The translations under genes were made by a program, and so were the position numbers. A stretch of DNA of 63,009 nt, the filler included, from Octopus bimaculoides (lineage: Eukaryota): assembly GCF_001194135.2 (NCBI RefSeq). It is 8 parts of 8 records of this genome, joined end to end, with 100 filler letters (N's around TTAATTAATTAA, not from the genome) between each part and the next. Parts side by side here need not be neighbours in the genome. Positions count along the whole stretch, not along the records: positions 30,180 to 38,881 come from NC_068997.1; 7 more parts are not named here. One strand, given 5' to 3'. The first letter of the stretch is position 1, and every line of letters starts with the position of its first letter. The notes under the pieces are model-generated. The model had not been told where the DNA came from and did no database searches. It worked only from the letters and a program-made list of their open reading frames with translations. Positions 3,229-38,881 of the stretch are shown here, one piece after another.

Positions 3229-4535
3229 GTGAAGAACATAAAATTCATGAAAACTTCGAATCATATTCAGAAGAAACTATCCAGCATAATACTTACTATA
3301 AAGAACTCTGATAATATTCATGTCCTCTCTGATAAAAGCAGATACTTATATTCCTTACCAATCAATACCTACAATAACTTTATCTTAAGAGAGCTACAAT
3401 TGAAATATAAAACAGTAATGGATGCCGGAGTGAAAGAAATTAATGAAAATCACTTTGACATGATTGAAGTGTTTAAACTGCTAGATAGAACCAAACCTCA
3501 TGCCCCTATGGCCCTGCATTTTACTCTGAAGGATCATAAAAAGGATTTTGAAAGTAAGCTAGCAATTAGATTGATTTGCTCAACCAAATCTAACCTGGGC
3601 AGAAACATTAAGTCCATCATCGATAAGATCACCCCTAAAGTAAAAAATAAAGAAGATCTACCACTTGAGGTTGTACCAACGATGTTATTAAGTCTTTTTG
3701 TTTGATAAACGAGAAGAAAACCCATTTTATACAGCTCGATATATGTAACTACTTCCAGTGTGTTACAAAGGATCTACTGGTGAAAGCAATTACATTCACC
3801 GAGAAAATTGTGGATATAACCCCTTTAGAGAAAGACATTATTTTCACAGCAACAAAAACCTTGATTTCTTTTAAAAACAAATTCTGGACCCGTAATGATA
3901 CTGACGAAAAATTTGACGTTACTATGGGTTCCTCTGATTCGGCCCAGATCACGGACCTGGTGGGTCTGTTCCTCCTTTCAAAAATTAAGGAAGAATTCCT
4001 AAACATCAGAGGAGGTTTGTATAGCGACAACACCCTATTTGCTAGTTCATGTTGTACATTACAAACAATCGATAGAATGAAGTAAAAAGATTTATTAAAT
4101 TTTGTAAGGTAAATAATTTGGCGGTCTGGTTTGAAAATACCACTAAAACTGTTAACTTTCTAGACGAAACATTAAATTAGGATAATAGGCTATTTTAACC
4201 CAACTATAAGCTGAATAAAACCATTCAATATATCCACACATTATATAACCATTTCCAAAGTATCATTAACGGAGTGATTAGGGAAATTTCGATTGTCGGC
4301 AAGCTAAATAGTTTTTAATAACATAGCACCTATTTTTAAGACAGCTTGGAGGAATAGTGGTTTTAAAAATGATATATATTATATTAAAGATACCCTATTC
4401 AAATACAAATTAGGTAAACGTTTTCCAAACCTAGCTGAAGCCAGTATTAATATCTTGTTCGTAAATAACCCTATCGTTTTAGGAGATTTCCTAGGTATTT
4501 TAGCATGTATAATAATAATAATAATAATGATGATA

Positions 4536-30079: not shown

Positions 30080-30489
30080 NNNNNNNNNNNNNNNNNNNNN
30101 NNNNNNNNNNNNNNNNNNNNNNNTTAATTAATTAANNNNNNNNNNNNNNNNNNNNNNNNNNNNNNNNNNNNNNNNNNNNTAGATAGATAGATAGATAGAT
30201 AGATATTACCGATACGTTAGTAACGTAATGTATATGTACACACACATACACATGCACACACACATACACATGCACACACACATACACATGCACACACACA
30301 TACACATGTACACACACAAACATACACATACACATACAAATAAGTCTGTGTGTCTGTGTGTTATTTAAATGATATAACATAATGCATAGAATATTTAATA
30401 TCCAAAATCAATGACAATAGCTAGTAGTCGGCATCGACTATACTTAATTTTTAGAATCAACATTGTTATAGTTGTTGCTGTTGTTGTTG

Positions 30490-30612
30490 TTCTTCTTTTT
30501 CTTCATCGTCATCATCATCATCATCATCTTCTTCTTCTTCTTCTTCTTCTTCTTCTTCTTCTTCTTCTTCTTCTTCTTCTTCTTCTTCTTCTTCTTCTTC
30601 TTCTTCTTCTTC

Positions 30613-30677
<65 letters not shown>
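30490..30677. repeat. Compound (CAT)/(TTC)n/(TTA)n microsatellite
   Basis: Directly visible. Confidence 0.95.
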
Positions 30678-30678
<1 letters not shown>

Positions 30679-30895
30679 AAGGGCGATGAGCTGGTAGAGT
30701 CGTTACAGCTGGGCAAAATACATAGCGGTGTCTTGTCCGTCTTTTCATTCTGACTTCAAATTCCACCGAGATCAACTTCGCCTTCCATCCTTTCGGGATC
30801 AATAAAATAAGTACCAGTTGAATATTGGGATCGTAGTAATCGACTTAGCCTCGCACTCCAAACTGCTAGTCTTGTGCCAAAATTTGAAAGTATCA
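30678..30895 (+). mobile_element. tRNA/Deu(Nin)-type SINE between (TTA)n tracts
   Basis: gggcgatgagctggtagagtcgtta..tcaaattccaccgagatcaacttcgccttccatcctttcgggatcaataaaataagtaccag. Confidence 0.8.
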
Positions 30896-30904
30896 TTATT
30901 ATTA

Positions 30905-30959
<55 letters not shown>

Positions 30960-32245
30960 CGTGTTTTCCTTCAATTATCATTCCATTTCTTGCTTAATGC
31001 CTTACCGACACCCAGGGCATATTAACTCAAACTATGAATTGATACGGTATTTAGATAAAATTCCGGTTTCTTTATTTACAGAATCAAATAATGTTACGTA
31101 AAAAAAAACAATAACCATTTATTAGAAAGAATAACAATATTTATATAATTATTATTAATACTGCAGTTCTTGTTATCATATCCAGCATTTGGTTCATACT
31201 ATTTACAAGCATATAGGAGAATGTGTCTGTCACGCACCCTTCAATTTTACAGCGTATTATCAATCGTAGATTTTCATTGGATTGTATGTACATTCATGGC
31301 TGATAACTTAAACGTAAAATATATTTCAGATCGAGAAGAGAATCAGGTCGATATCCTTCAGAAAAACATTTGCAGAGTAGATCCACATAGGACTGGGATC
31401 ATGGAAGTGAAACACGCAAATATGTGTGTAAATATATGCATACGTATGTATGAGTAATATATATATATATATATATATANNNNNNNNNNNNNNNNNNNNN
31501 NNNNNNNNNNNNNNNNNNNNNNNNNNNNNNNNNNNNNNNNNNNNNNNNNNNNNNNNNNNNNNNNNNNNNNNNNNNNNNNNNNNNNNNNNNNNNNNNNNNN
31601 NNNNNNNNNNNNNNNNNNNNNNNNNNNNNNNNNNNNNNNNNNNNNNNNNNNNNNNNNNNNNNNNNNNNNNNNNNNNNNNNNNNNNNNNNNNNNNNNNNNN
31701 NNNNNNNNNNNNNNNNNNNNNNNNNNNNNNNNNNNNNNNNNNNNNNNNNNNNNNNNNNNNNNNNNNNNNNNNNNNNNNNNNNNNNNNNNNNNNNNNNNNN
31801 NNNNNNNNNNNNNNNNNNNNNNNNNNNNNNNNNNNNNNNNNNNNNNNNNNNNNNNNNNNNNNNNNNNNNNNNNNNNNNNNNNNNNNNNNNNNNNNNNNNN
31901 NNNNNNNNNNNNNNNNNNNNNNNNNNNNNNNNNNNNNNNNNNNNNNNNNNNNNNNNNNNNNNNNNNNNNNNNNNNNNNNNNNNNNNNNNNNNNNNNNNNN
32001 NNNNNNNNNNNNNNNNNNNNNNNNNNNNNNNNNNNNNNNNNNNNNNNNNNNNNNNNNNNNNNNNTATATATATTTATATATGTATGTATGGATATATATA
32101 TATGTACACAGTAAGATTTCGATATTTCATTTAGGCACACCTGTTATAAAAACTCAATGTACGTATATTTCAGAATAGAGCGTTGGGTGATTAGACACGC
32201 GCGCGCGCGCATAATTTAAAATGACGACGCTAACGATGATGACCA

Positions 32246-32462
32246 CTATCCTCCTCCAGAATAGAACGCACCACACAAAAACTTTATGAATAAAATATTA
32301 CCCCATTCAGACATAAGCAACAATGGAAACCCTACCGACCCATATTCGACATTAAATCCAGAAAGTAACTCTGACTCCCCTTCAACAAAATCAAATGAAA
32401 CTCGATGAGTTTCCGCAATTATAGATATCACTCATATTATAAATATAAAAAAAATTAACAAC
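32246..32462 (-). pseudogene. nad1: NUMT: mitochondrial nad1 fragment
   Basis: With the invertebrate mitochondrial code it reads [52 protein letters not shown]; an in-frame TGA sits at a Trp position; matches the ND1 AETNRxPFDxxEGESELVSGFNVEY motif. Confidence 0.88.
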
Positions 32463-32724
32463 ATATATATATAGATGCGTACATACATAAAGTAATAGAG
32501 ATAGACTGTCGGCAAAACAAAGACGTATAGAATAGACATAGACAGAGAAATTATCTGATCGATGAATGTATGGAAAGATAAACTGGTAGAATAGGCATAC
32601 ATACTTGCATCTCATGCGACTTCTTCGTGGCCGGTCTATTACAAGTGTTCGTATTTGAAAGAAAATAACGAAGAGTTGAAGAAAAGTTACACTAATCTCA
32701 TGTATACGCCCATCACCACCACTA

Positions 32725-33160
32725 TCTCCACCACCACCACCACAGTCGCCAGCAAATAAGGTCAATAATAACAAGAAGAAGATTATGAACACATTTTACG
32801 TTCTTCGTTTTGATAGTTTCTTTTTCTCTTTTCAGTATTCTTCTCTCCGCTTGAATACGAAAGAAAATGAAGTCGAGATCAAAGAGAGAATTTCGCCTGA
32901 ATTAACACAAAACAACGCACCGAGAAAAAGAAAGTTAGCAATGGATGTCAAACGAGGAGTAGGTCACTAAGTCACCTGGCCAGTCTGGACAATCAACAGT
33001 ATTTAGATATCTACAATTGTCCTAGCGTAAATTACAGAGCGGCCATATTTCGCCTCAGGGATGATTTCCTTTAAAAGTATCGGCGGGTGGTTATTTCTGA
33101 TCCAAATTTACCGACTTCACACAAAATTATTTACCGACACAGAAAACCCGTCAGTTACAC
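32725..33160 (+). repeat. Left arm of long inverted repeat
   Basis: Reverse complement of 34699-35160 (e.g. cctagcgtaaattacagagcggccatatttcgcct / aggcgaaatatggccgctctgtaatttacgctagg), with indels. Confidence 0.9.
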
Positions 33161-33202
33161 TATATTTGATATTATTATTACTATTATTATTATTATTATA
33201 CG

Positions 33203-33246
<44 letters not shown>

Positions 33247-33874
33247 GTACACATACACACGCACATTCATATATATATATATATATATATACATTCCCGG
33301 ATCTTAGCGGTTGGCTAAAAGAAACGACCACTAGAATAAATACGAGGTTTAAAAAAAATAATAATAAATACTGCGGTCAATTCGTTCGACAAAAAATTTT
33401 CAAGGCCATGCCCCAGCAAGGCCGCAGTCTAATGAGTGAAACAAGCGAGAGAGAAATAAAAGTTAAGGAGATAAACATGTATAAAATCAATATGCAGATA
33501 ACAGCTATATTGGAAACAATTTTATAGATAATTAATATACAGATAATAATTATATAATTAAAAATTATTTATGTAATTCATACATGGATAACAAATATGC
33601 AGATAACATAAATACAATATATAGAGGATAACTATGCATGCAATGATACGTATGTAATAGATATGTAAATAATAACTATATAGATCTTAAATGCATAAAG
33701 AAGTAGATTTCTAATAAATAATTAGAAATACATACATTTAATAGATAATAAATATGTAGATATTAAATATAGAGAAAATAATATTAAGGAATTATGTATG
33801 AAATAAATATAATTATGATAGGAATGAAGATAAATATTTTGATAATATATATATATATATTTACTATTTTTTTT

Positions 33875-34268
33875 TTTACTTGTTTCAGTCATTTGACTGC
33901 GGCCATGCTGGAGCACCGCCTTCAGTCGAGAAAATCGACCCCAGGATTTATTCTTTGGAAGCCTAGTACTTATTCTATCGGTCTCTTTTTGCCGAACCGC
34001 TAAGTTACGGGGAAGTAAACACACCACCATCGGCTGTCAAGCGATGGTGGGGGGACAAACAGACACACAAACACACACACACATATATATATATATATAC
34101 ATACATATATACGACGGGCTTCTTTCAGTTTCCGTCTACCAAATCCACTCACAAGGCTTTGATCGGCCCGAGGCTATAGTAGAAGACACTTGCCCAAGGT
34201 GCCACGCAGTGGGACTGAACCCGGAACCATGTGGTTGGTAAGCAAGCTACTTACCACACAGCCACTCC
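33875..34268 (-). mobile_element. Full-length tRNA-derived CORE-type SINE
   Basis: A box, B box and CORE-like segment as at 27172-27550. Confidence 0.92.
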
Positions 34269-34321
34269 TATATATATATATAGAGATAGATGATATGTAC
34301 ACATTGGAAAAATGATAATAG

Positions 34322-34355
<34 letters not shown>

Positions 34356-34586
34356 ATAACAAATATGTAGGTAATAGGTATATTGATAATACGTACGTGG
34401 ATATTAGATATATAGAAAATAATATGCAATATACGTACAGAATTAATATATACATATAACAATTATGCAGATTATAAACCTATAGGATAGAAAATGTTTA
34501 TGTAATATGTATATAATATATTATTGATAATATATATGTATATTATTAATTTCTAGATAGTAAATAAGCAGATACGATTCTATAGA

Positions 34587-34660
<74 letters not shown>

Positions 34661-34698
34661 GTGAATGTATGTACATAAAAAGAATACAATGAAGTGCG

Positions 34699-35160
34699 CA
34701 GTGAAACTGACGGGTTTTCTGTGTCGGTAAATAATTTTGTTTTGTGTGAAGTCGGTAAATTTGGATCAGCAACAGAAATAGTATCACACCACCCGCCGAT
34801 GCTTTTAAAGGAAACCATCCCTCAGGCGAAATATGGCCGCTCTGTAATTTACGCTAGGACGATTGTAGATATCGAAATACCGTTGTTTGTCCAGACTGAC
34901 CAGGTGACTTAGTGACCTACTCTTCGCTTGACATCCATTGCTAACTTTCTTATTGTCTGTGCGTTGTTTTGTGTTAATTCAGGCGAAATTCTCTCTTTGA
35001 TCTTGTCTTCATTTTCTTTCGTATTTAATTGGGGAAATGAAATCTGAAAAGAGAAAAAGAAACTATGAAAACGAAGAACATGTAAAATGTGTTCCTAATC
35101 TTCTTCTTCTTCTTGTTATTGACCTTATTTGCTGGCGATTGTGATGGTGGAGGTGGTGGT
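34699..35160 (-). repeat. Right arm of long inverted repeat
   Basis: Reverse complement of the left arm at 32725-33160. Confidence 0.9.
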
Positions 35161-35313
35161 GTGGAACATTTTAATGTAAATCTGTTTAACCTTCCTTTCC
35201 ATTTCTGAAACCTCAATATACAAAGAAAATATTGTATTATTAATAATTGAAAAGGAACAGCAATTTGGAAGATATTTTGAAGGGCATATACATATAAGTA
35301 TACATATACACAA

Positions 35314-35348
<35 letters not shown>

Positions 35349-35389
35349 CATATACATTCATTGATGCGCGCATGTGTGTGTGTATTTGA

Positions 35390-35625
35390 AGTCGTAACTC
35401 AATAGTAAAGGTTTTGCAGTCATGATCGTAGGATTGTGCGTTCGATTCCTAGACGAGGCGCTGTGATGTGTTTATGATCAAAATTTCTTCATTTCAAGTT
35501 ACCCCAGTTCATTGTGCCGGAAAAAGTAGTAAATCTGCTTCTGGTCCGGCGGAGAAACATATACGCCACAAAATCTGGCAAATCGACCCTATTTGCCTAT
35601 GGCTCATGCAGTGCGTTGACCTTAT
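35390..35625 (+). mobile_element. Degenerate tRNA-headed SINE
   Basis: A-box-like gtaactcaatagtaaagg and B-box gttcgattcc, followed by a non-tRNA body and (TA)n. Confidence 0.5.
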
Positions 35626-35626
35626 A

Positions 35627-35682
<56 letters not shown>

Positions 35683-36322
35683 TATAGACATATAAATACA
35701 TATATATATATAATGTCAAACGAATGAGAGAGGCATGCTCAATTCATTTTATAGAGTGAATGGTTTACTGAGACTGACTGTTTGTCTCACAATACCATTT
35801 TTGGCGCCATTGTAATCTGTACCTCTGAAGATCTCAATGGCTTGATACTTGACTCACGAGACATTCACCCATTTTCAATAAACTATAACTCCATATTTAT
35901 AATATTTCGTTCAATGACAGTTCGGGATATCGATACCTCAAATCAGTTTGCTGTTAAACATGCAGATAACAACTATTCGCTGTCCCTCTGCATGAAATAT
36001 CTCCCTCTATCTCTGTGGCAAATGAGTTCTATTATTATTTCTTTATACAATGGTGGATATCTTATAATACAAGACTTCAAATAGGCAAATTTCTTAGAAT
36101 ATCTGCTAGAATGCTTTACGGTATAGGTTCCGGTTCCCTGCGTTCAGAGATCTAATTGCACCAAGATCACTTTCGATTTTCATATGTTCGTGTAAGAGAA
36201 ATAAGTAGCAGTCCATCACAATAATTGGTTCTTCGCTGCCTATCTATTACTCTTATTATCTCTCTCATCCTCTCACTACCTCACCCCACTTCTCTATTTA
36301 TTTCTCTCTCTGTCTCTCTAAG

Positions 36323-36452
36323 AAGTATCAGACGAAAAAATAAGTTGTACTCAGATCAGTAGAGGGCTGGACTTCCGATTTAAATGTCTTAGATACAACA
36401 CTTGTGACAATGACACCGTCACGCCTCACTTCAGATCTGTTATGAGCCCGCA
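36323..36452 (+). CDS. Homeobox gene, candidate upstream exon (VSDEKISCTQISRGLDFRFKCLRYNTCDNDTVTPHFRSVMSP)
   Basis: tctctctgtctctctaag|AA...CCGCA|gtaagg; 130 nt, phase 1 to 2, open and phase-compatible with the next two exons. Confidence 0.5.
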
Positions 36453-36652
36453 GTAAGGCAAGTCAATATTGTATTTTCTCTTCTTTAGTTTCTTTGGGAC
36501 CATACGACCAAGTCCATGCTGGAGTACAAACTATAGAACTTTAAAAATTGTAATTTACGATGAATATGTTGACATTAAAATAAAATTAAGACTCCTATCT
36601 TACCATTTACCATATTACATTTACATATAATATATTTCATGTATTGCTTTAG

Positions 36653-36672
36653 AATGAAGAGAATTCGATGTC
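36653..36672 (+). CDS. Homeobox gene, candidate 20-nt micro-exon (QMKRIRC/R)
   Basis: gtattgctttag|AATGAAGAGAATTCGATGTC|gtaagt; phase 2 to 1; followed by a 60-nt intron. Confidence 0.5.
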
Positions 36673-36732
36673 GTAAGTCTTAAAAATGTTTCCTCTTCAC
36701 AACCATTATAAATTGGAATCATCTTATTTTAG

Positions 36733-36887
36733 GGGATGGCCTCAAGTCTCAGAGACGCAAACGCTGTCGGACATCTTTCACACCAGAACAAGTGGCAACG
36801 TTAGAGAAGGAATTTCAGTTCACCAAATATATTTCTGTTTCAAGAAGGATTCATCTCTCACTGACCTTGGGACTCACAGACACGCAG
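36733..36887 (+). CDS. ANTP-class homeodomain exon (HD positions 1-44): DGLKSQRRKRCRTSFTPEQVATLEKEFQFTKYISVSRRIHLSLTLGLTDTQ
   Basis: cttattttag|GG...ACGCAG|GCAAGT. Conserved HD residues R5, F8, L16, E17, F20, Y25, R31, L38, L40 and Q44 are all present, and the phase-0 intron is at the classic 44/45 site. Confidence 0.9.
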
Positions 36888-37777
36888 GCAAGTGTACCGG
36901 TATGAATGTATGTGTGTGTGTGTGCGTGTGTATGCGTATTGTTATATTTGGGGGTGATTATATCTTTTTGCCAATTACCCACACGCATTTTATACTGGGT
37001 CTTCACTTCAGCTTCATCATTATTCTTATTTTAATATCCTTTGACATCTCAACCGGCACCGAGATGAGAAGAGTCAATATGAATCGTATACTCTTTGTGT
37101 GAAAAATCATAAACGATAAATAAATTTTTAATTCACCTGAAGAAAACGTCTTTTATTACATGATGTAACTGATTTGTTAATTAATTAAAAAAAAACGCAT
37201 CTGAAACAGCTGTAGTACACCTCAGCCTATATGCGTTATAATTTATACTACCGCCTACTTGGAACCTTGTATGTACGGTAGGCTGTGGATTGCATGACGG
37301 AATATTCTCTTTTGTGATTTTACGTACACGTTGGGGTGTTTTGTTCTATACATATGAATATATGCGTAACTGGAAGGAAAAATTCGTATTTCCTTTAGTA
37401 AGTACATGGATGTTCGTAAACACCATTAATACACAGGTATGCTATCTCCGACTCTACCATGGTGCCTTTGTTATTAGAATATGTTGATTCCATTGGATCC
37501 TGAAAATATATATACACATATATTTACATGGAGCTTAACTATGGTCTATCCACAGCACTTACTCAGCATTAACTGACACCTTGTGGGTCTTACTGACACC
37601 ATTACCTCATATATAATATATNNNNNNNNNNATATATATATATATATACATACATACATACATACATACATATACATTTACGTATATATATATACACACA
37701 CACTACACACATGTTTTTCAATTGCATAGATAAATTAAGAAATGGAGTTAAACGCCGGTGTTATTCAAATCTTTATA

Positions 37778-37866
37778 TTTCCGACATATGTTTCGAAGAA
37801 ACCATTAGTATTCTTCCCGAGGAAATAAAATGATGTAAAACAATGCGATCTTCTCATCAGGCAAAA
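37778..37866 (-). ncRNA. Minimal type I hammerhead ribozyme (PLE-type)
   Basis: Minus strand: tttgc-CTGATGA-GAAGA...TCTTC-GAA-ACATATGT-C-ggaaa. It has a 5-bp stem II base, palindromic stem III, GUC triplet, and a stem I with one mismatch. Confidence 0.7.
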
Positions 37867-37947
37867 AAAAAGAGAGAAACAAAACAAACACATCAATAAG
37901 ACATTAAAACCGGTTAAAATGGCTTTTTAATGTGTTTTCTTTCTCTT

Positions 37948-38037
37948 TTTCTCCTGATGAGATGATTACTTTCTTTTTACATCATTTTATTCCCTCAGGA
38001 ATAATACCAATATTCTCTTCGAAGTATATGTCGGAAG
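37948..38037 (+). ncRNA. Degenerate hammerhead copy (GAAAC mutated to GAAGT)
   Basis: CTGATGA at 37954-37960, ...cttcGAAGTatatGTCggaag at 38017-38037. Confidence 0.5.
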
Positions 38038-38843
38038 TATAAAGATTTGAATAACACCTGCGTTTAACTCCATTTCTTAATTTATCTATGCCATCCAAAA
38101 ACATTTCATGAAACTCTGGAATTTCTACCTTTATAAGTAGGCTGTAACATCCTTGGCACTTCAGTGAATTTTTGCTACCCTGGTAACTATTTAGTCGTTT
38201 TTTCCCTGTTATTTGTACACATTGAAAAATTACACATACATTTATATATATACATACATACATACACACATATATATATATATATATATATANNNNNNNN
38301 NNATATATATATATATATATATATCCATTTAGTATTATTTCCCATTACTCCTCTCTCCCTCACACCTCCATATCTCCATATAATTATTCCTTTTCCGAAA
38401 CTCTTTCACATTTCTTCACTTCCTTCCATTCATTTTCTTTCACTCATTTCACACACACATCCAAACATTTACCCTCTCGTTTCCCTTCATCATTCCCTAA
38501 CACTCCTAACTCTAAAGGTCTCTCTCTTACTCCCAGTATATCATCTTTATATATTTCATTTCTTCTCTCCCTACATCTCCCCCACCTGTCTCTCACTATC
38601 TCTTCCCCCTCACACACACACACACCCAAACTCTCACACTCACATCAAACTATTTTCTGTCTAGTTTTGTATCTTTTTTCCTGTGTCCCACTCTGTCTTT
38701 ACCTTTCTCACTTTCTCCCTTTATTTATATACACATATAAACAAACACACACACACACACACACATTTATATATACATACATATATGTTAATGTCTATAT
38801 TTATAATGTGATTATATACACACACCTATATATCCTTACACAC

Positions 38844-38881
<38 letters not shown>

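What the first reader, a model, noticed from the sequence alone, without database searches (positions are those of the whole stretch)
36323..36893. Divergent ANTP-class homeobox gene with a GC-AG intron, a micro-exon and a missing recognition helix
Seen: HD positions 1-44 with the core residues intact, ending at CAG|GCAAGT, an otherwise perfect-consensus GC donor at the canonical 44/45 intron site. Two upstream exons (130 nt and 20 nt; introns 200 and 60 nt) chain in phase. I found no properly spliced WFQNRR-type exon in the visible downstream sequence. Established: the 44/45 intron is common in NKL-type genes, and GC-AG donors often defeat gene predictors. Inference: the residues mix BarH-like (LGLTDTQ), Rough-like (YIS.SRR) and Not/Vax-like (RTSFTPEQ) features, so this may be an unclassified cephalopod-specific homeobox. 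Helix 3 probably lies in an N-gap or beyond the window; alternatively the gene is truncated.
Basis: partly seen in the sequence, partly recalled or inferred. Interest (0 to 1): 0.75.

Follow-up and report, generated by a model that had tools for sequence, protein, structure and literature searches.

The report
Divergent Nedx/lms homeobox gene, middle exon
The stretch is a real exon encoding the first 44 residues of a homeodomain, and it is best read as the middle exon of a divergent member of the known Nedx/lms homeobox family, whose DNA-recognition helix lies on a later exon outside the available piece.

Summary
The sequence-level observation holds. Window 36733-36887 (+) encodes homeodomain residues 1-44 (Pfam E = 5e-12). 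It has an AG acceptor and ends at CAG|GCAAGT. No helix-3 exon exists anywhere in the piece.

The "unclassified, cephalopod-specific" reading is not supported.
- Of the 70 most similar homeodomains among 1.84 billion representative proteins, 69 belong to the Nedx/lms family.
- The exon has the same architecture as the middle exon of the Nedx genes of a chiton and a nemertean: phase-1 acceptor just before the homeodomain and phase-0 donor after Q44.
- It carries the E19/V28/R30 combination.

It is nevertheless an outlier: 20-29/44 identities to Nedx, against a within-family median of 37. Five substitutions fall at near-invariant family positions. Its donor is GC where relatives have GT.

The 130-nt and 20-nt upstream exons chain arithmetically but have no supporting evidence. 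No EH1-bearing first exon is in the piece. The missing helix 3 is most simply explained by the piece ending 2 kb downstream.

A relic or pseudogene exon cannot be excluded. The cephalopod origin could not be tested. Interest is modest: a new, unannotated, divergent member of a known family.

The parts
36733..36887 (+). 155-nt internal coding exon. It has a phase-1 start (xGG GAT...), eight residues (x)DGLKSQR, then homeodomain residues 1-44, and a phase-0 end after Q44.
   Evidence: Same phases and same content as exon 2 of chiton Nedx (140 nt) and Lineus Nedx. The 15-nt difference from the chiton exon equals five extra codons.
36731..36732 (+). AG acceptor, preceded by a pyrimidine-rich run (tcatcttatttt).
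   Evidence: An in-frame TAA at 36681 with no ATG in between makes splicing necessary.
36888..36893 (+). GC donor, CAG|GCAAGT, at the position homologous to the CAG|GTATGT donors of chiton and Lineus Nedx. It matches 8 of 9 positions of MAG|GTRAGT.
   Evidence: Of 55 unspliced Nedx ORFs that break after residue 44, 51 continue with V (GTN) and none with A (GCN).
36900..36905 (+). Alternative in-frame GT donor, CCG|GTATGA (6 of 9 consensus positions). It overlaps the in-frame stop TGA at 36903-36905. Its use would insert ASVP between residues 44 and 45.
   Evidence: direct reading of the sequence.
36888..38881 (+). First 1994 bases of the 44/45 intron, with 10-N gaps at 37622-37631 and 38293-38302. 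It contains no helix-3 exon.
36639..36672 (+). Low-confidence upstream coding segment ending at the donor GTC|GTAAGT (36673). The frame is open for 31 codons, with ATGs at 36639 and 36654 (MYCFRMKRIRC / MKRIRC).
   Evidence: It is the only donor-like site within about 830 nt upstream whose compatible frame reaches an ATG. It has no homology to Nedx N-termini.
36323..36452 (+). It is open in the chaining frame and preceded by an 80-nt CT-rich tract and AG.
   Evidence: No Pfam match outside the homeodomain and no similarity to Nedx proteins. An open frame of 43 codons has roughly a 5% chance at this base composition (my estimate).

Best explanation
The exon at 36733-36887 is the middle coding exon of a divergent Nedx/lms-family (ANTP-class) homeobox gene.

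As in the chiton and nemertean Nedx genes, this exon carries the N-terminal arm and helices 1 and 2 (residues 1-44). A phase-0 intron follows Q44. The recognition helix (expected form [IV]K[IV]WFQNRRTKWKRK...) sits on the next exon, which lies beyond the 2 kb of sequence available downstream.

The intron's donor is GC instead of GT, but it fits the U1 consensus at every other position. It is therefore most likely spliced as a normal U2-type GC-AG intron.

The product would be a sequence-specific homeodomain transcription factor.

Shown: the homeodomain half, the splice-site motifs, the family affinity and the shared exon structure.

Inferred: that the gene is transcribed, that the GC donor is used, and that a helix-3 exon and an upstream first exon exist outside the piece.
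For: - Pfam Homeodomain match, E = 5e-12.
- Exhaustive HMMER search of 1.84 billion representatives: the best single-domain hits are 57-65% identical. Sixty-nine of the 70 nearest homeodomains are closest to Drosophila lms in a curated panel, and every complete one carries IKIWFQNRRTKWKRKY (panel from PMC10726417 Table S1).
- Named members among the hits: 'lateral muscles scarcer' of Leptinotarsa and amphioxus 'Linked to engrailed and distalless homeobox b'. Nedx = CG13424/lms (PMC2982225).
- NJ tree on 44 columns and 105 sequences: the query nests inside Nedx, next to chiton and Lineus. Its sister group is purely Nedx in 599 of 1000 bootstraps.
- E19/R30 HOX-like polarity plus V28, as in Nedx (bioRxiv 10.1101/2023.03.14.532566).
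- Gene structure: chiton exon 2 is 140 nt, with a phase-1 start 'G|GT GAC' and the donor CAG|GTATGT after Q44. Lineus has the same phases. The query has the same phases, starts (x)GG GAT, and is 15 nt longer.
- Fifty-five of 70 Nedx-type library entries are unspliced ORFs that break exactly after residue 44.
- The query keeps 21 of the 27 positions that are at least 95% conserved in 82 Nedx homeodomains, but only 3 of the 17 less conserved ones. That is a pattern of purifying selection.
- Introns at or near this homeodomain position in a snail range from 0.3 to about 24 kb (coordinates). A helix-3 exon more than 2 kb away is therefore ordinary.
Against: - Identity to Nedx is only 20-29/44 (median 24), against 37 within the family. 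That is at or below the family minimum of 24.
- Five substitutions (P4C, A7S, K14A, L26I, E42D) fall at near-invariant positions and are seen in none of 82 Nedx sequences.
- Bootstrap support is modest: 60% for a Nedx-only sister group and 24% for the exact clade.
- The Nedx sequences in that tree were picked from the best hits.
- No EH1 motif and no Nedx-like first exon lie in the 6.5 kb upstream.
- No identical or near-identical protein exists in 5.8 billion predicted proteins, so there is neither a transcript-derived nor an annotated counterpart.
- The GC donor is unique among 55 comparable family members.
Confidence: 0.6

Rival explanations
1. It is a relic or pseudogene. On this view the exon is the remnant of a decaying Nedx gene, or of a duplicated fragment. 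The donor has mutated from GT to GC, the EH1-bearing first exon is lost, and the gene is no longer expressed as a complete homeodomain protein.
For: - It lies at or below the bottom of the family identity range and has five unique changes at near-invariant positions.
- Its donor is GC where 51 of 55 relatives read GTN.
- No first exon or EH1 motif, and no helix-3 exon, is present in 8.7 kb.
- No annotated or assembled protein matches it.
- Nedx is missing from a complete gastropod homeobox list, so the family is prone to loss in molluscs.
Against: - The exon has no stop or frameshift.
- All structural core residues are kept, and 21 of 27 near-invariant positions are retained against 3 of 17 variable ones.
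- Both splice motifs are otherwise strong. GC donors with a perfect remaining consensus are a known functional minority class.
- The absence of the flanking exons is uninformative when only 2 kb downstream is visible and Lineus intron 1 is 12.3 kb.
Confidence: 0.25
2. It is a lineage-specific ANTP-class homeobox family that is not orthologous to Nedx. The resemblance to Nedx would then be convergence or long-branch attraction.
For: - Maximum identity to any known homeodomain is 66% over 44 residues.
- The exact Nedx+query clade appears in only 24% of bootstraps, and NK1 is sister in 13%.
- The 44/45 intron is shared by many ANTP families, so it is not specific on its own.
Against: - Sixty-nine of the 70 nearest neighbours in an unbiased library of 1.84 billion proteins are Nedx.
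- The phase-1 intron just upstream of the homeodomain, and the exon starting 'xD', are shared with chiton Nedx.
Confidence: 0.1
3. It is a chance open frame or an assembly artefact with no biological meaning.
For: The piece is rich in microsatellites and dispersed repeats and contains three gaps.
Against: Pfam E = 5e-12 and tblastn E = 1e-14. The match ends exactly at conserved intron positions flanked by splice motifs. The exon is not part of any repeat family.
Confidence: 0.01

Closest known systems
Nedx / lms (lateral muscles scarcer, CG13424) family, ANTP class; closest single member Liolophura sinensis XP_064598547.1 (P0030)
   Same: - It is the best match of all known homeodomains: 29/44 identities to the chiton protein and 27/44 to Lineus.
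- It shares KY[LI]SV in the loop, E19/V28/R30 and LGLT[ED]TQ.
- It shares the three-exon plan, with a phase-1 intron just before the homeodomain and a phase-0 intron after Q44.
   Different: - It is much more divergent than any of the 82 family members compared (median 24/44 against 37/44).
- It has unique P4C, A7S, K14A, L26I and E42D changes.
- It has five extra residues (GLKSQ) before the homeodomain.
- Its donor is GC instead of GT.
- No EH1-bearing first exon was seen.
- Helix 3 and the family's C-terminal motif were not observed.
Abox (CG34031 family)
   Same: It also has E19, V28, K30 and YLSVSKRVELS.
   Different: - Only 18/44 identities by direct count, and not among the 30 best panel matches.
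- Abox has Q6/Y8 (RQAYS), whereas the query has T6/F8 like Nedx.
- The Pomacea Abox homeobox is split near residue 25, not at 44/45.
BarH / Barhl
   Same: YLSV in the loop and LTDTQ at 40-44 in molluscan and human BarH.
   Different: 20-21/44 identities. BarH has S19 and D/E30 (NK-like or uncharged), whereas the query has E19/R30.
Rough (Ro), Not and Vax
   Same: YIS.SRR resembles Ro, and RT.FTPEQ resembles Noto.
   Different: Ro has R28. Noto and Vax have G28 and E30. Identities are 23/44 (Drosophila Ro) and 21/44 (Noto).
U2-type GC-AG introns
   Same: The donor is CAG|GCAAGT, which is consensus at every position except +2. That is typical of functional GC donors (general knowledge).
   Different: The 3' end of the intron and its use in RNA were not observed. 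A second in-frame GT donor lies 12 nt downstream.

Membership tests
Homeodomain (Pfam PF00046) | Profile match above the curated cut-off | tested here: met
   45.8 bits against 22.9, E = 5.3e-12, profile positions 1-43 of 57.
Homeodomain (Pfam PF00046) | Third (recognition) helix with W48, F49, N51 and R53 | tested here: inconclusive
   Absent from the piece. The frame stops five codons after Q44 at a conserved intron site, and only 2 kb downstream is available.
ANTP class | No proline at residue 26 (L, I, V or M instead) | tested here: met
   I26. Criterion from bioRxiv 10.1101/2023.03.14.532566.
Nedx/lms | Nearest neighbours in sequence space are family members | tested here: met
   Sixty-nine of the 70 closest homeodomains among 1.84 billion representatives are Nedx. 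The family's identity is fixed by lms and amphioxus names and by the Drosophila panel.
Nedx/lms | Groups with the family in a tree, with support | tested here: inconclusive
   It nests in Nedx in the full-data NJ tree. The sister group is only Nedx in 60% of 1000 bootstraps and the exact clade appears in 24%. Only 44 columns were available.
Nedx/lms | E19, V28, [RK]30 (HOX-like salt-bridge polarity with valine at 28) | tested here: met
   The query has E19, V28 and R30. The combination is shared with Abox, so it is not sufficient alone.
Nedx/lms | Family near-invariant residues in positions 1-44 (27 positions at least 95% conserved in 82 members) | tested here: inconclusive
   Twenty-one of 27 are kept. 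P4C, A7S, K14A, L26I and E42D are seen in no member, and I13V in three.
Nedx/lms | Exon plan: phase-1 intron shortly before the homeodomain and phase-0 intron after residue 44 | tested here: met
   Chiton L001 and Lineus L002. Fifty-five of 70 family ORFs break after residue 44. The query has the same phases.
Nedx/lms | Helix 3 and tail IKIWFQNRRTKWKRK[YLM], followed by the ..LE..A..YY motif | not testable with these tools
   That exon is outside the piece.
Nedx/lms | N-terminal EH1 motif (FSI..LL) | tested here: inconclusive
   It is present in the aligned members. No EH1-like motif occurs in any frame of the piece. Intron 1 is 12.3 kb in Lineus and the piece has a 585-N gap, so the motif may lie outside.
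Nedx/lms | Linkage to Engrailed and Distal-less | not testable with these tools
   Only 8.7 kb is available. The linkage is described for amphioxus.
BarH/Barhl | Uncharged residue 19 and acidic residue 30 | tested here: not met
   The query has E19/R30, whereas BarH has S19 and D/E30. Identity is 20-21/44.
Rough | R28 | tested here: not met
   The query has V28.
Not / Vax / Emx | G28 | tested here: not met
   The query has V28.
GC-AG intron | GC at +1/+2 with an otherwise consensus donor, AG at the 3' end, and use in RNA | tested here: inconclusive
   The donor motif is present. The acceptor and any transcript evidence are unavailable.

The most novel reading that the evidence does not exclude
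On this reading the gene has lost the EH1 repressor motif. It is spliced through a GC-AG intron, or through two alternative donors 12 nt apart, one of which would place a four-residue insertion (ASVP) between helices 2 and 3 of the homeodomain.
Probability: 0.12. Interest if true: 0.5.

Novelty: new member of a known kind. Interest (0 to 1): 0.3.

Why it matters
Nedx/lms is one of the few ancient ANTP-class families lost from vertebrates. In the sources consulted here it is not listed for gastropods or bivalves. In the protein searches run here, the only mollusc among the best hits was a chiton.

An intact but strongly divergent Nedx-type exon in another mollusc-like genome, missed by annotation, would:
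- add a data point on retention versus loss of this family;
- show that homeobox surveys based on predicted proteins miss split homeoboxes with non-GT donors.

It does not change any general picture. The gene's integrity and expression remain to be shown.

Tried and rejected
1. Word-indexed search of 5.8 billion proteins with the 51-residue exon returned no hit. No annotated or assembled orthologue was available for dN/dS or for finding the joined exon.
2. The metagenome contig scan with back-translated peptides gave 600 pattern matches, none confirmed.
3. The search for helix 3 by regex, tblastn at E <= 50 and an unfiltered HMM found nothing. 'KIYFRSRR' at 31316 (E = 12) is noise and lies upstream.
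4. No EH1 motif was found in any frame. 'HPFSINYNS' at about 35866 lacks the hydrophobic end of the motif, and its ORF has no Pfam match.
5. The supplement of the Hong Kong oyster paper holds an Octopus sinensis homeobox sheet, but that sheet was cut off in the stored copy. Whether this gene was already listed there is unknown.
6. No paper among the top-ranked results of the literature search combined 'Nedx' with a cephalopod term; all 15 listed had zero occurrences of 'Nedx'.
7. Rfam gave only sub-threshold hits on TA/CA microsatellites and a hairpin repeat, and ARAGORN found no tRNA. These results did not help to identify the organism.
8. The first bootstrap run with Biopython timed out. It was redone with my own NJ code.
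9. Abox was considered because it shares E19/V28/K30. It was rejected on 18/44 identity, Q6/Y8 and a different intron position.

Full report
**What is in the sequence**

On the + strand, 36733-36887 reads (x)GG GAT GGC ... ACG CAG. From 36735 it translates to DGLKSQR followed by RKRCRTSFTPEQVATLEKEFQFTKYISVSRRIHLSLTLGLTDTQ. The second part is homeodomain positions 1-44, with R3, R5, F8, L16, F20, Y25, R31, L34, L38 and L40 in place. Pfam's Homeodomain model matches at 45.8 bits (cut-off 22.9, E = 5.3e-12) over profile positions 1-43 of 57.

The frame is closed upstream by TAA at 36681 with no ATG in between. It is closed downstream by TGA at 36903-36905. The exon is preceded by a pyrimidine run and AG (36731-36732) and followed by GCAAGT, so it must be an internal exon.

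- A GT donor candidate (CCG|GTATGA) lies 12 nt further on at 36900, also in phase 0.
- The frame ending at the 36673 donor is open for 31 codons and contains ATGs at 36639 and 36654. The '20-nt micro-exon' could therefore equally be the end of a first coding exon.

**What is not in the piece**

No helix-3 exon exists on either strand of 30180-38881. It was sought by regular expressions, by tblastn with twelve Nedx proteins at E <= 50, and by an HMM of 66 Nedx helix-3 and tail segments run without filters (best score negative).

Only 1994 bases follow the exon, with 10-N gaps at 37622-37631 and 38293-38302. In a snail whose homeobox coordinates are published, homeodomain-splitting introns at or near this position range from about 0.3 kb (Mnx) to about 14 kb (Dlx) and about 24 kb (Nk6). 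The absence therefore says nothing about the gene.

No EH1 motif and no other Nedx-like segment is present in the 6.5 kb upstream, which includes a 585-N gap.

**Which family**

The word-indexed search of 5.8 billion proteins found nothing, so no annotated or assembled protein contains this exon.

The exhaustive HMMER search of 1.84 billion cluster representatives gave 1188 hits. The best single-domain ones are 57-65% identical. I ranked the best 150 by similarity over the 44 residues. I then labelled each by its nearest sequence in a curated panel. The panel comprises Drosophila ANTP homeodomains from PMC10726417 Table S1 and Pomacea ANTP homeodomains from PMC7566022 additional file 4. Sixty-nine of the top 70 are closest to Drosophila lms (family Nedx); the exception is one Hox3-like sequence. 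Every complete one continues IKIWFQNRRTKWKRKY, a tail that played no part in their selection.

The family's identity is anchored as follows:
- A Leptinotarsa protein is named 'lateral muscles scarcer'.
- Amphioxus has 'Linked to engrailed and distalless homeobox b'.
- PMC2982225 equates Nedx with CG13424.

The automatic names of the other members are inconsistent (BarH-like, MSX, HMX, ceh-19, Hox-B7a-like), as expected for a family without a vertebrate member.

Identities over 44 residues:

| Compared with | Identities /44 |
|---|---|
| Liolophura (chiton) Nedx, XP_064598547.1 | 29 |
| Lineus (nemertean) Nedx | 27 |
| Nematostella Nedx | 26 |
| Pomacea En, Pomacea Xlox, Drosophila Ro | 23 |
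| NK1 | 22 |
| BarH | 20-21 |
| Noto | 21 |
| Abox (direct count) | 18 |

An NJ tree was built on the 44 columns with 105 sequences. In it, Nedx plus the query form a clade, and the query sits next to chiton and Lineus. In 1000 bootstraps the query's sister group is purely Nedx 599 times, NK1 131 times, and the exact clade appears 239 times. That is modest, as expected for 44 sites. The Nedx sequences in the tree came from the best hits, which favours the grouping somewhat.

**Diagnostic residues**

A recent analysis of ANTP homeodomains uses the 19/30 salt-bridge polarity and residue 28 as group markers. It classes Nedx/lms as HOX-like (E19, R/K30). The query has E19, V28 and R30, as Nedx does.
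- BarH has S19 and D/E30.
- Rough has R28.
- Noto and Vax have G28 and E30.

Abox shares E19/V28/K30. However, it has Q6/Y8, much lower identity, and a homeobox split near residue 25 in Pomacea.

**Gene structure**

I fetched the chiton and nemertean genes and mapped their exons.

| Gene | Exon 1 | Intron 1 | Exon 2 | Donor after Q44 | Intron 2 | Exon 3 starts |
|---|---|---|---|---|---|---|
| Chiton, L001 | Met to ...FHSG, includes EH1 FSIRNIL; ends G\|GTCAGT (phase 1) | 387 nt | 3901-4040, 140 nt, starts GT GAC CGC CGG ('G-D-RRKRPRT') | CAG\|GTATGT | 1.0 kb | GTG AAG ATA TGG |
| Lineus, L002 | ends in phase 1 | 12.3 kb | contains the last 13 residues before the homeodomain and residues 1-44 | CAG\|GTATGT | about 0.24 kb | IKIW |
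| Query | not in the piece | unknown | 36733-36887, 155 nt, phase-1 start (x)GG GAT ('x-D-GLKSQ-RRKRCRT') | CAG\|GCAAGT, phase 0 | at least 2 kb | not in the piece |

The query exon is exactly five codons longer than the chiton exon.

Across the family, 55 of the 70 Nedx-type entries among the 150 best hits are unspliced ORF calls that break right after residue 44. Fifty-one of them continue with V (GTN, read-through of a GT donor) and none with A. The 44/45 intron is therefore a family-wide feature, and the GC donor is peculiar to this gene.

**How divergent it is**

I compared the query with 82 distinct Nedx homeodomains chosen by their helix-3 and tail signature. That set is rich in arthropods. 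The query is identical at 20-29 positions (median 24). Members share a median of 37, a 5th percentile of 30 and a minimum of 24.

The query keeps 21 of the 27 positions that are at least 95% conserved, but only 3 of the 17 less conserved ones. This is the pattern of long-term purifying selection, not of free drift. Five of its departures (P4C, A7S, K14A, L26I, E42D) occur in no other member. All are conservative or lie outside the hydrophobic core.

**Upstream exons**

However:
- An open 43-codon frame has roughly a 5% chance at this base composition (my estimate).
- The segments have no Pfam match and no similarity to Nedx N-termini.
- The two spiralian relatives have a single large EH1-bearing first exon in that position.

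Among six donor-like sites in the 830 nt upstream, only 36673 (GTC|GTAAGT) has a compatible frame that reaches an ATG. It is therefore the best local candidate. If it is real, the protein would have only 14-19 residues before the homeodomain and no EH1 motif. I treat both upstream exons as unproven.

**Most likely mechanism**

This is a three-exon-type Nedx/lms homeobox gene whose middle exon is seen here. Its 44/45 intron has the donor CAG|GCAAGT. That donor pairs with U1 at eight of nine positions, against six of nine for the GT site at 36900. It would be removed as an ordinary GC-AG intron, joining Q44 to a [IV]K[IV]WFQNRR... exon more than 2 kb away. The product would be a Q50-type homeodomain transcription factor.

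In other animals the family acts in lateral muscle identity (Drosophila lms). In amphioxus it is expressed in left pharyngeal epidermis. Nothing can be said about its role here.

**Rivals**

- A relic or pseudogene exon. This cannot be excluded without transcripts or orthologues.
- A truly separate lineage-specific family. This is made unlikely by the nearest-neighbour result and the shared phase-1 intron.
- A chance ORF. This is excluded.

**Taxon**

The low G+C (about 0.33) and the abundant TA/CA microsatellites are merely compatible with it.

In the protein searches, the only mollusc among the best Nedx hits is a chiton. The complete Pomacea list has no Nedx. The three spiralian homeobox surveys I checked do not mention Nedx in their text.

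**Verdict**

The exon is real and correctly delimited. It is a divergent, unannotated member of the known Nedx/lms family, not a new kind of homeobox. The missing helix is an effect of the piece's edge. The micro-exon is unproven. The GC donor is genuine in the DNA and unusual for the family. Interest is modest.

Noticed in passing
window 32760-33160 (+) and 34720-35120 (-): Two copies of a dispersed repeat of about 390 nt, 91% identical, lie in inverted orientation 1.7 kb apart. Each abuts a TA/ATT microsatellite. They carry no tRNA-like head (ARAGORN negative) and no protein match. They are probably a non-autonomous interspersed element.
   Followed up: partly
window 37711-37840 and 37975-38104: A 130-nt inverted repeat (89% complementary, 134-nt loop) lies inside the presumed 44/45 intron. 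It is a MITE-like hairpin and gives sub-threshold Rfam hits to hairpin-derived miRNA families (MIR4371, 36.6 bits against a gathering score of 110).
   Followed up: partly
window 30490-30677 and 30891-30959: Long pure trinucleotide arrays: (TTC)41, then (TTA)21, then (TAT)23. TA and CA/TG dinucleotide arrays are scattered through the piece. All three assembly gaps (31480-32064, 37622-37631, 38293-38302) sit inside or beside TA-rich arrays.
   Followed up: no
It looks like a very strong polypyrimidine tract and acceptor, but it could equally be simple low-complexity sequence.
   Followed up: no
It is the same GC-type donor sequence as at 36888.
   Followed up: no
L001 (Liolophura CM072720.1) and the protein collection: Members of the Nedx/lms family carry a dozen different automatic names in public records, including Hox-B7a-like, BarH-like 1, MSX-2/3, HMX3-like, ceh-19, koza, vex1 and GBX-2-like. 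Name-based surveys would therefore miss the family.
   Followed up: partly
P0047, P0049, P0053, P0055, P0072 (library hits): Several unspliced Nedx ORFs from environmental assemblies share ...SESTSDGKKRPRT and diverge immediately upstream of it. This suggests an intron about eight residues before the homeodomain in that unknown organism too, at the same distance as in the query.
   Followed up: no
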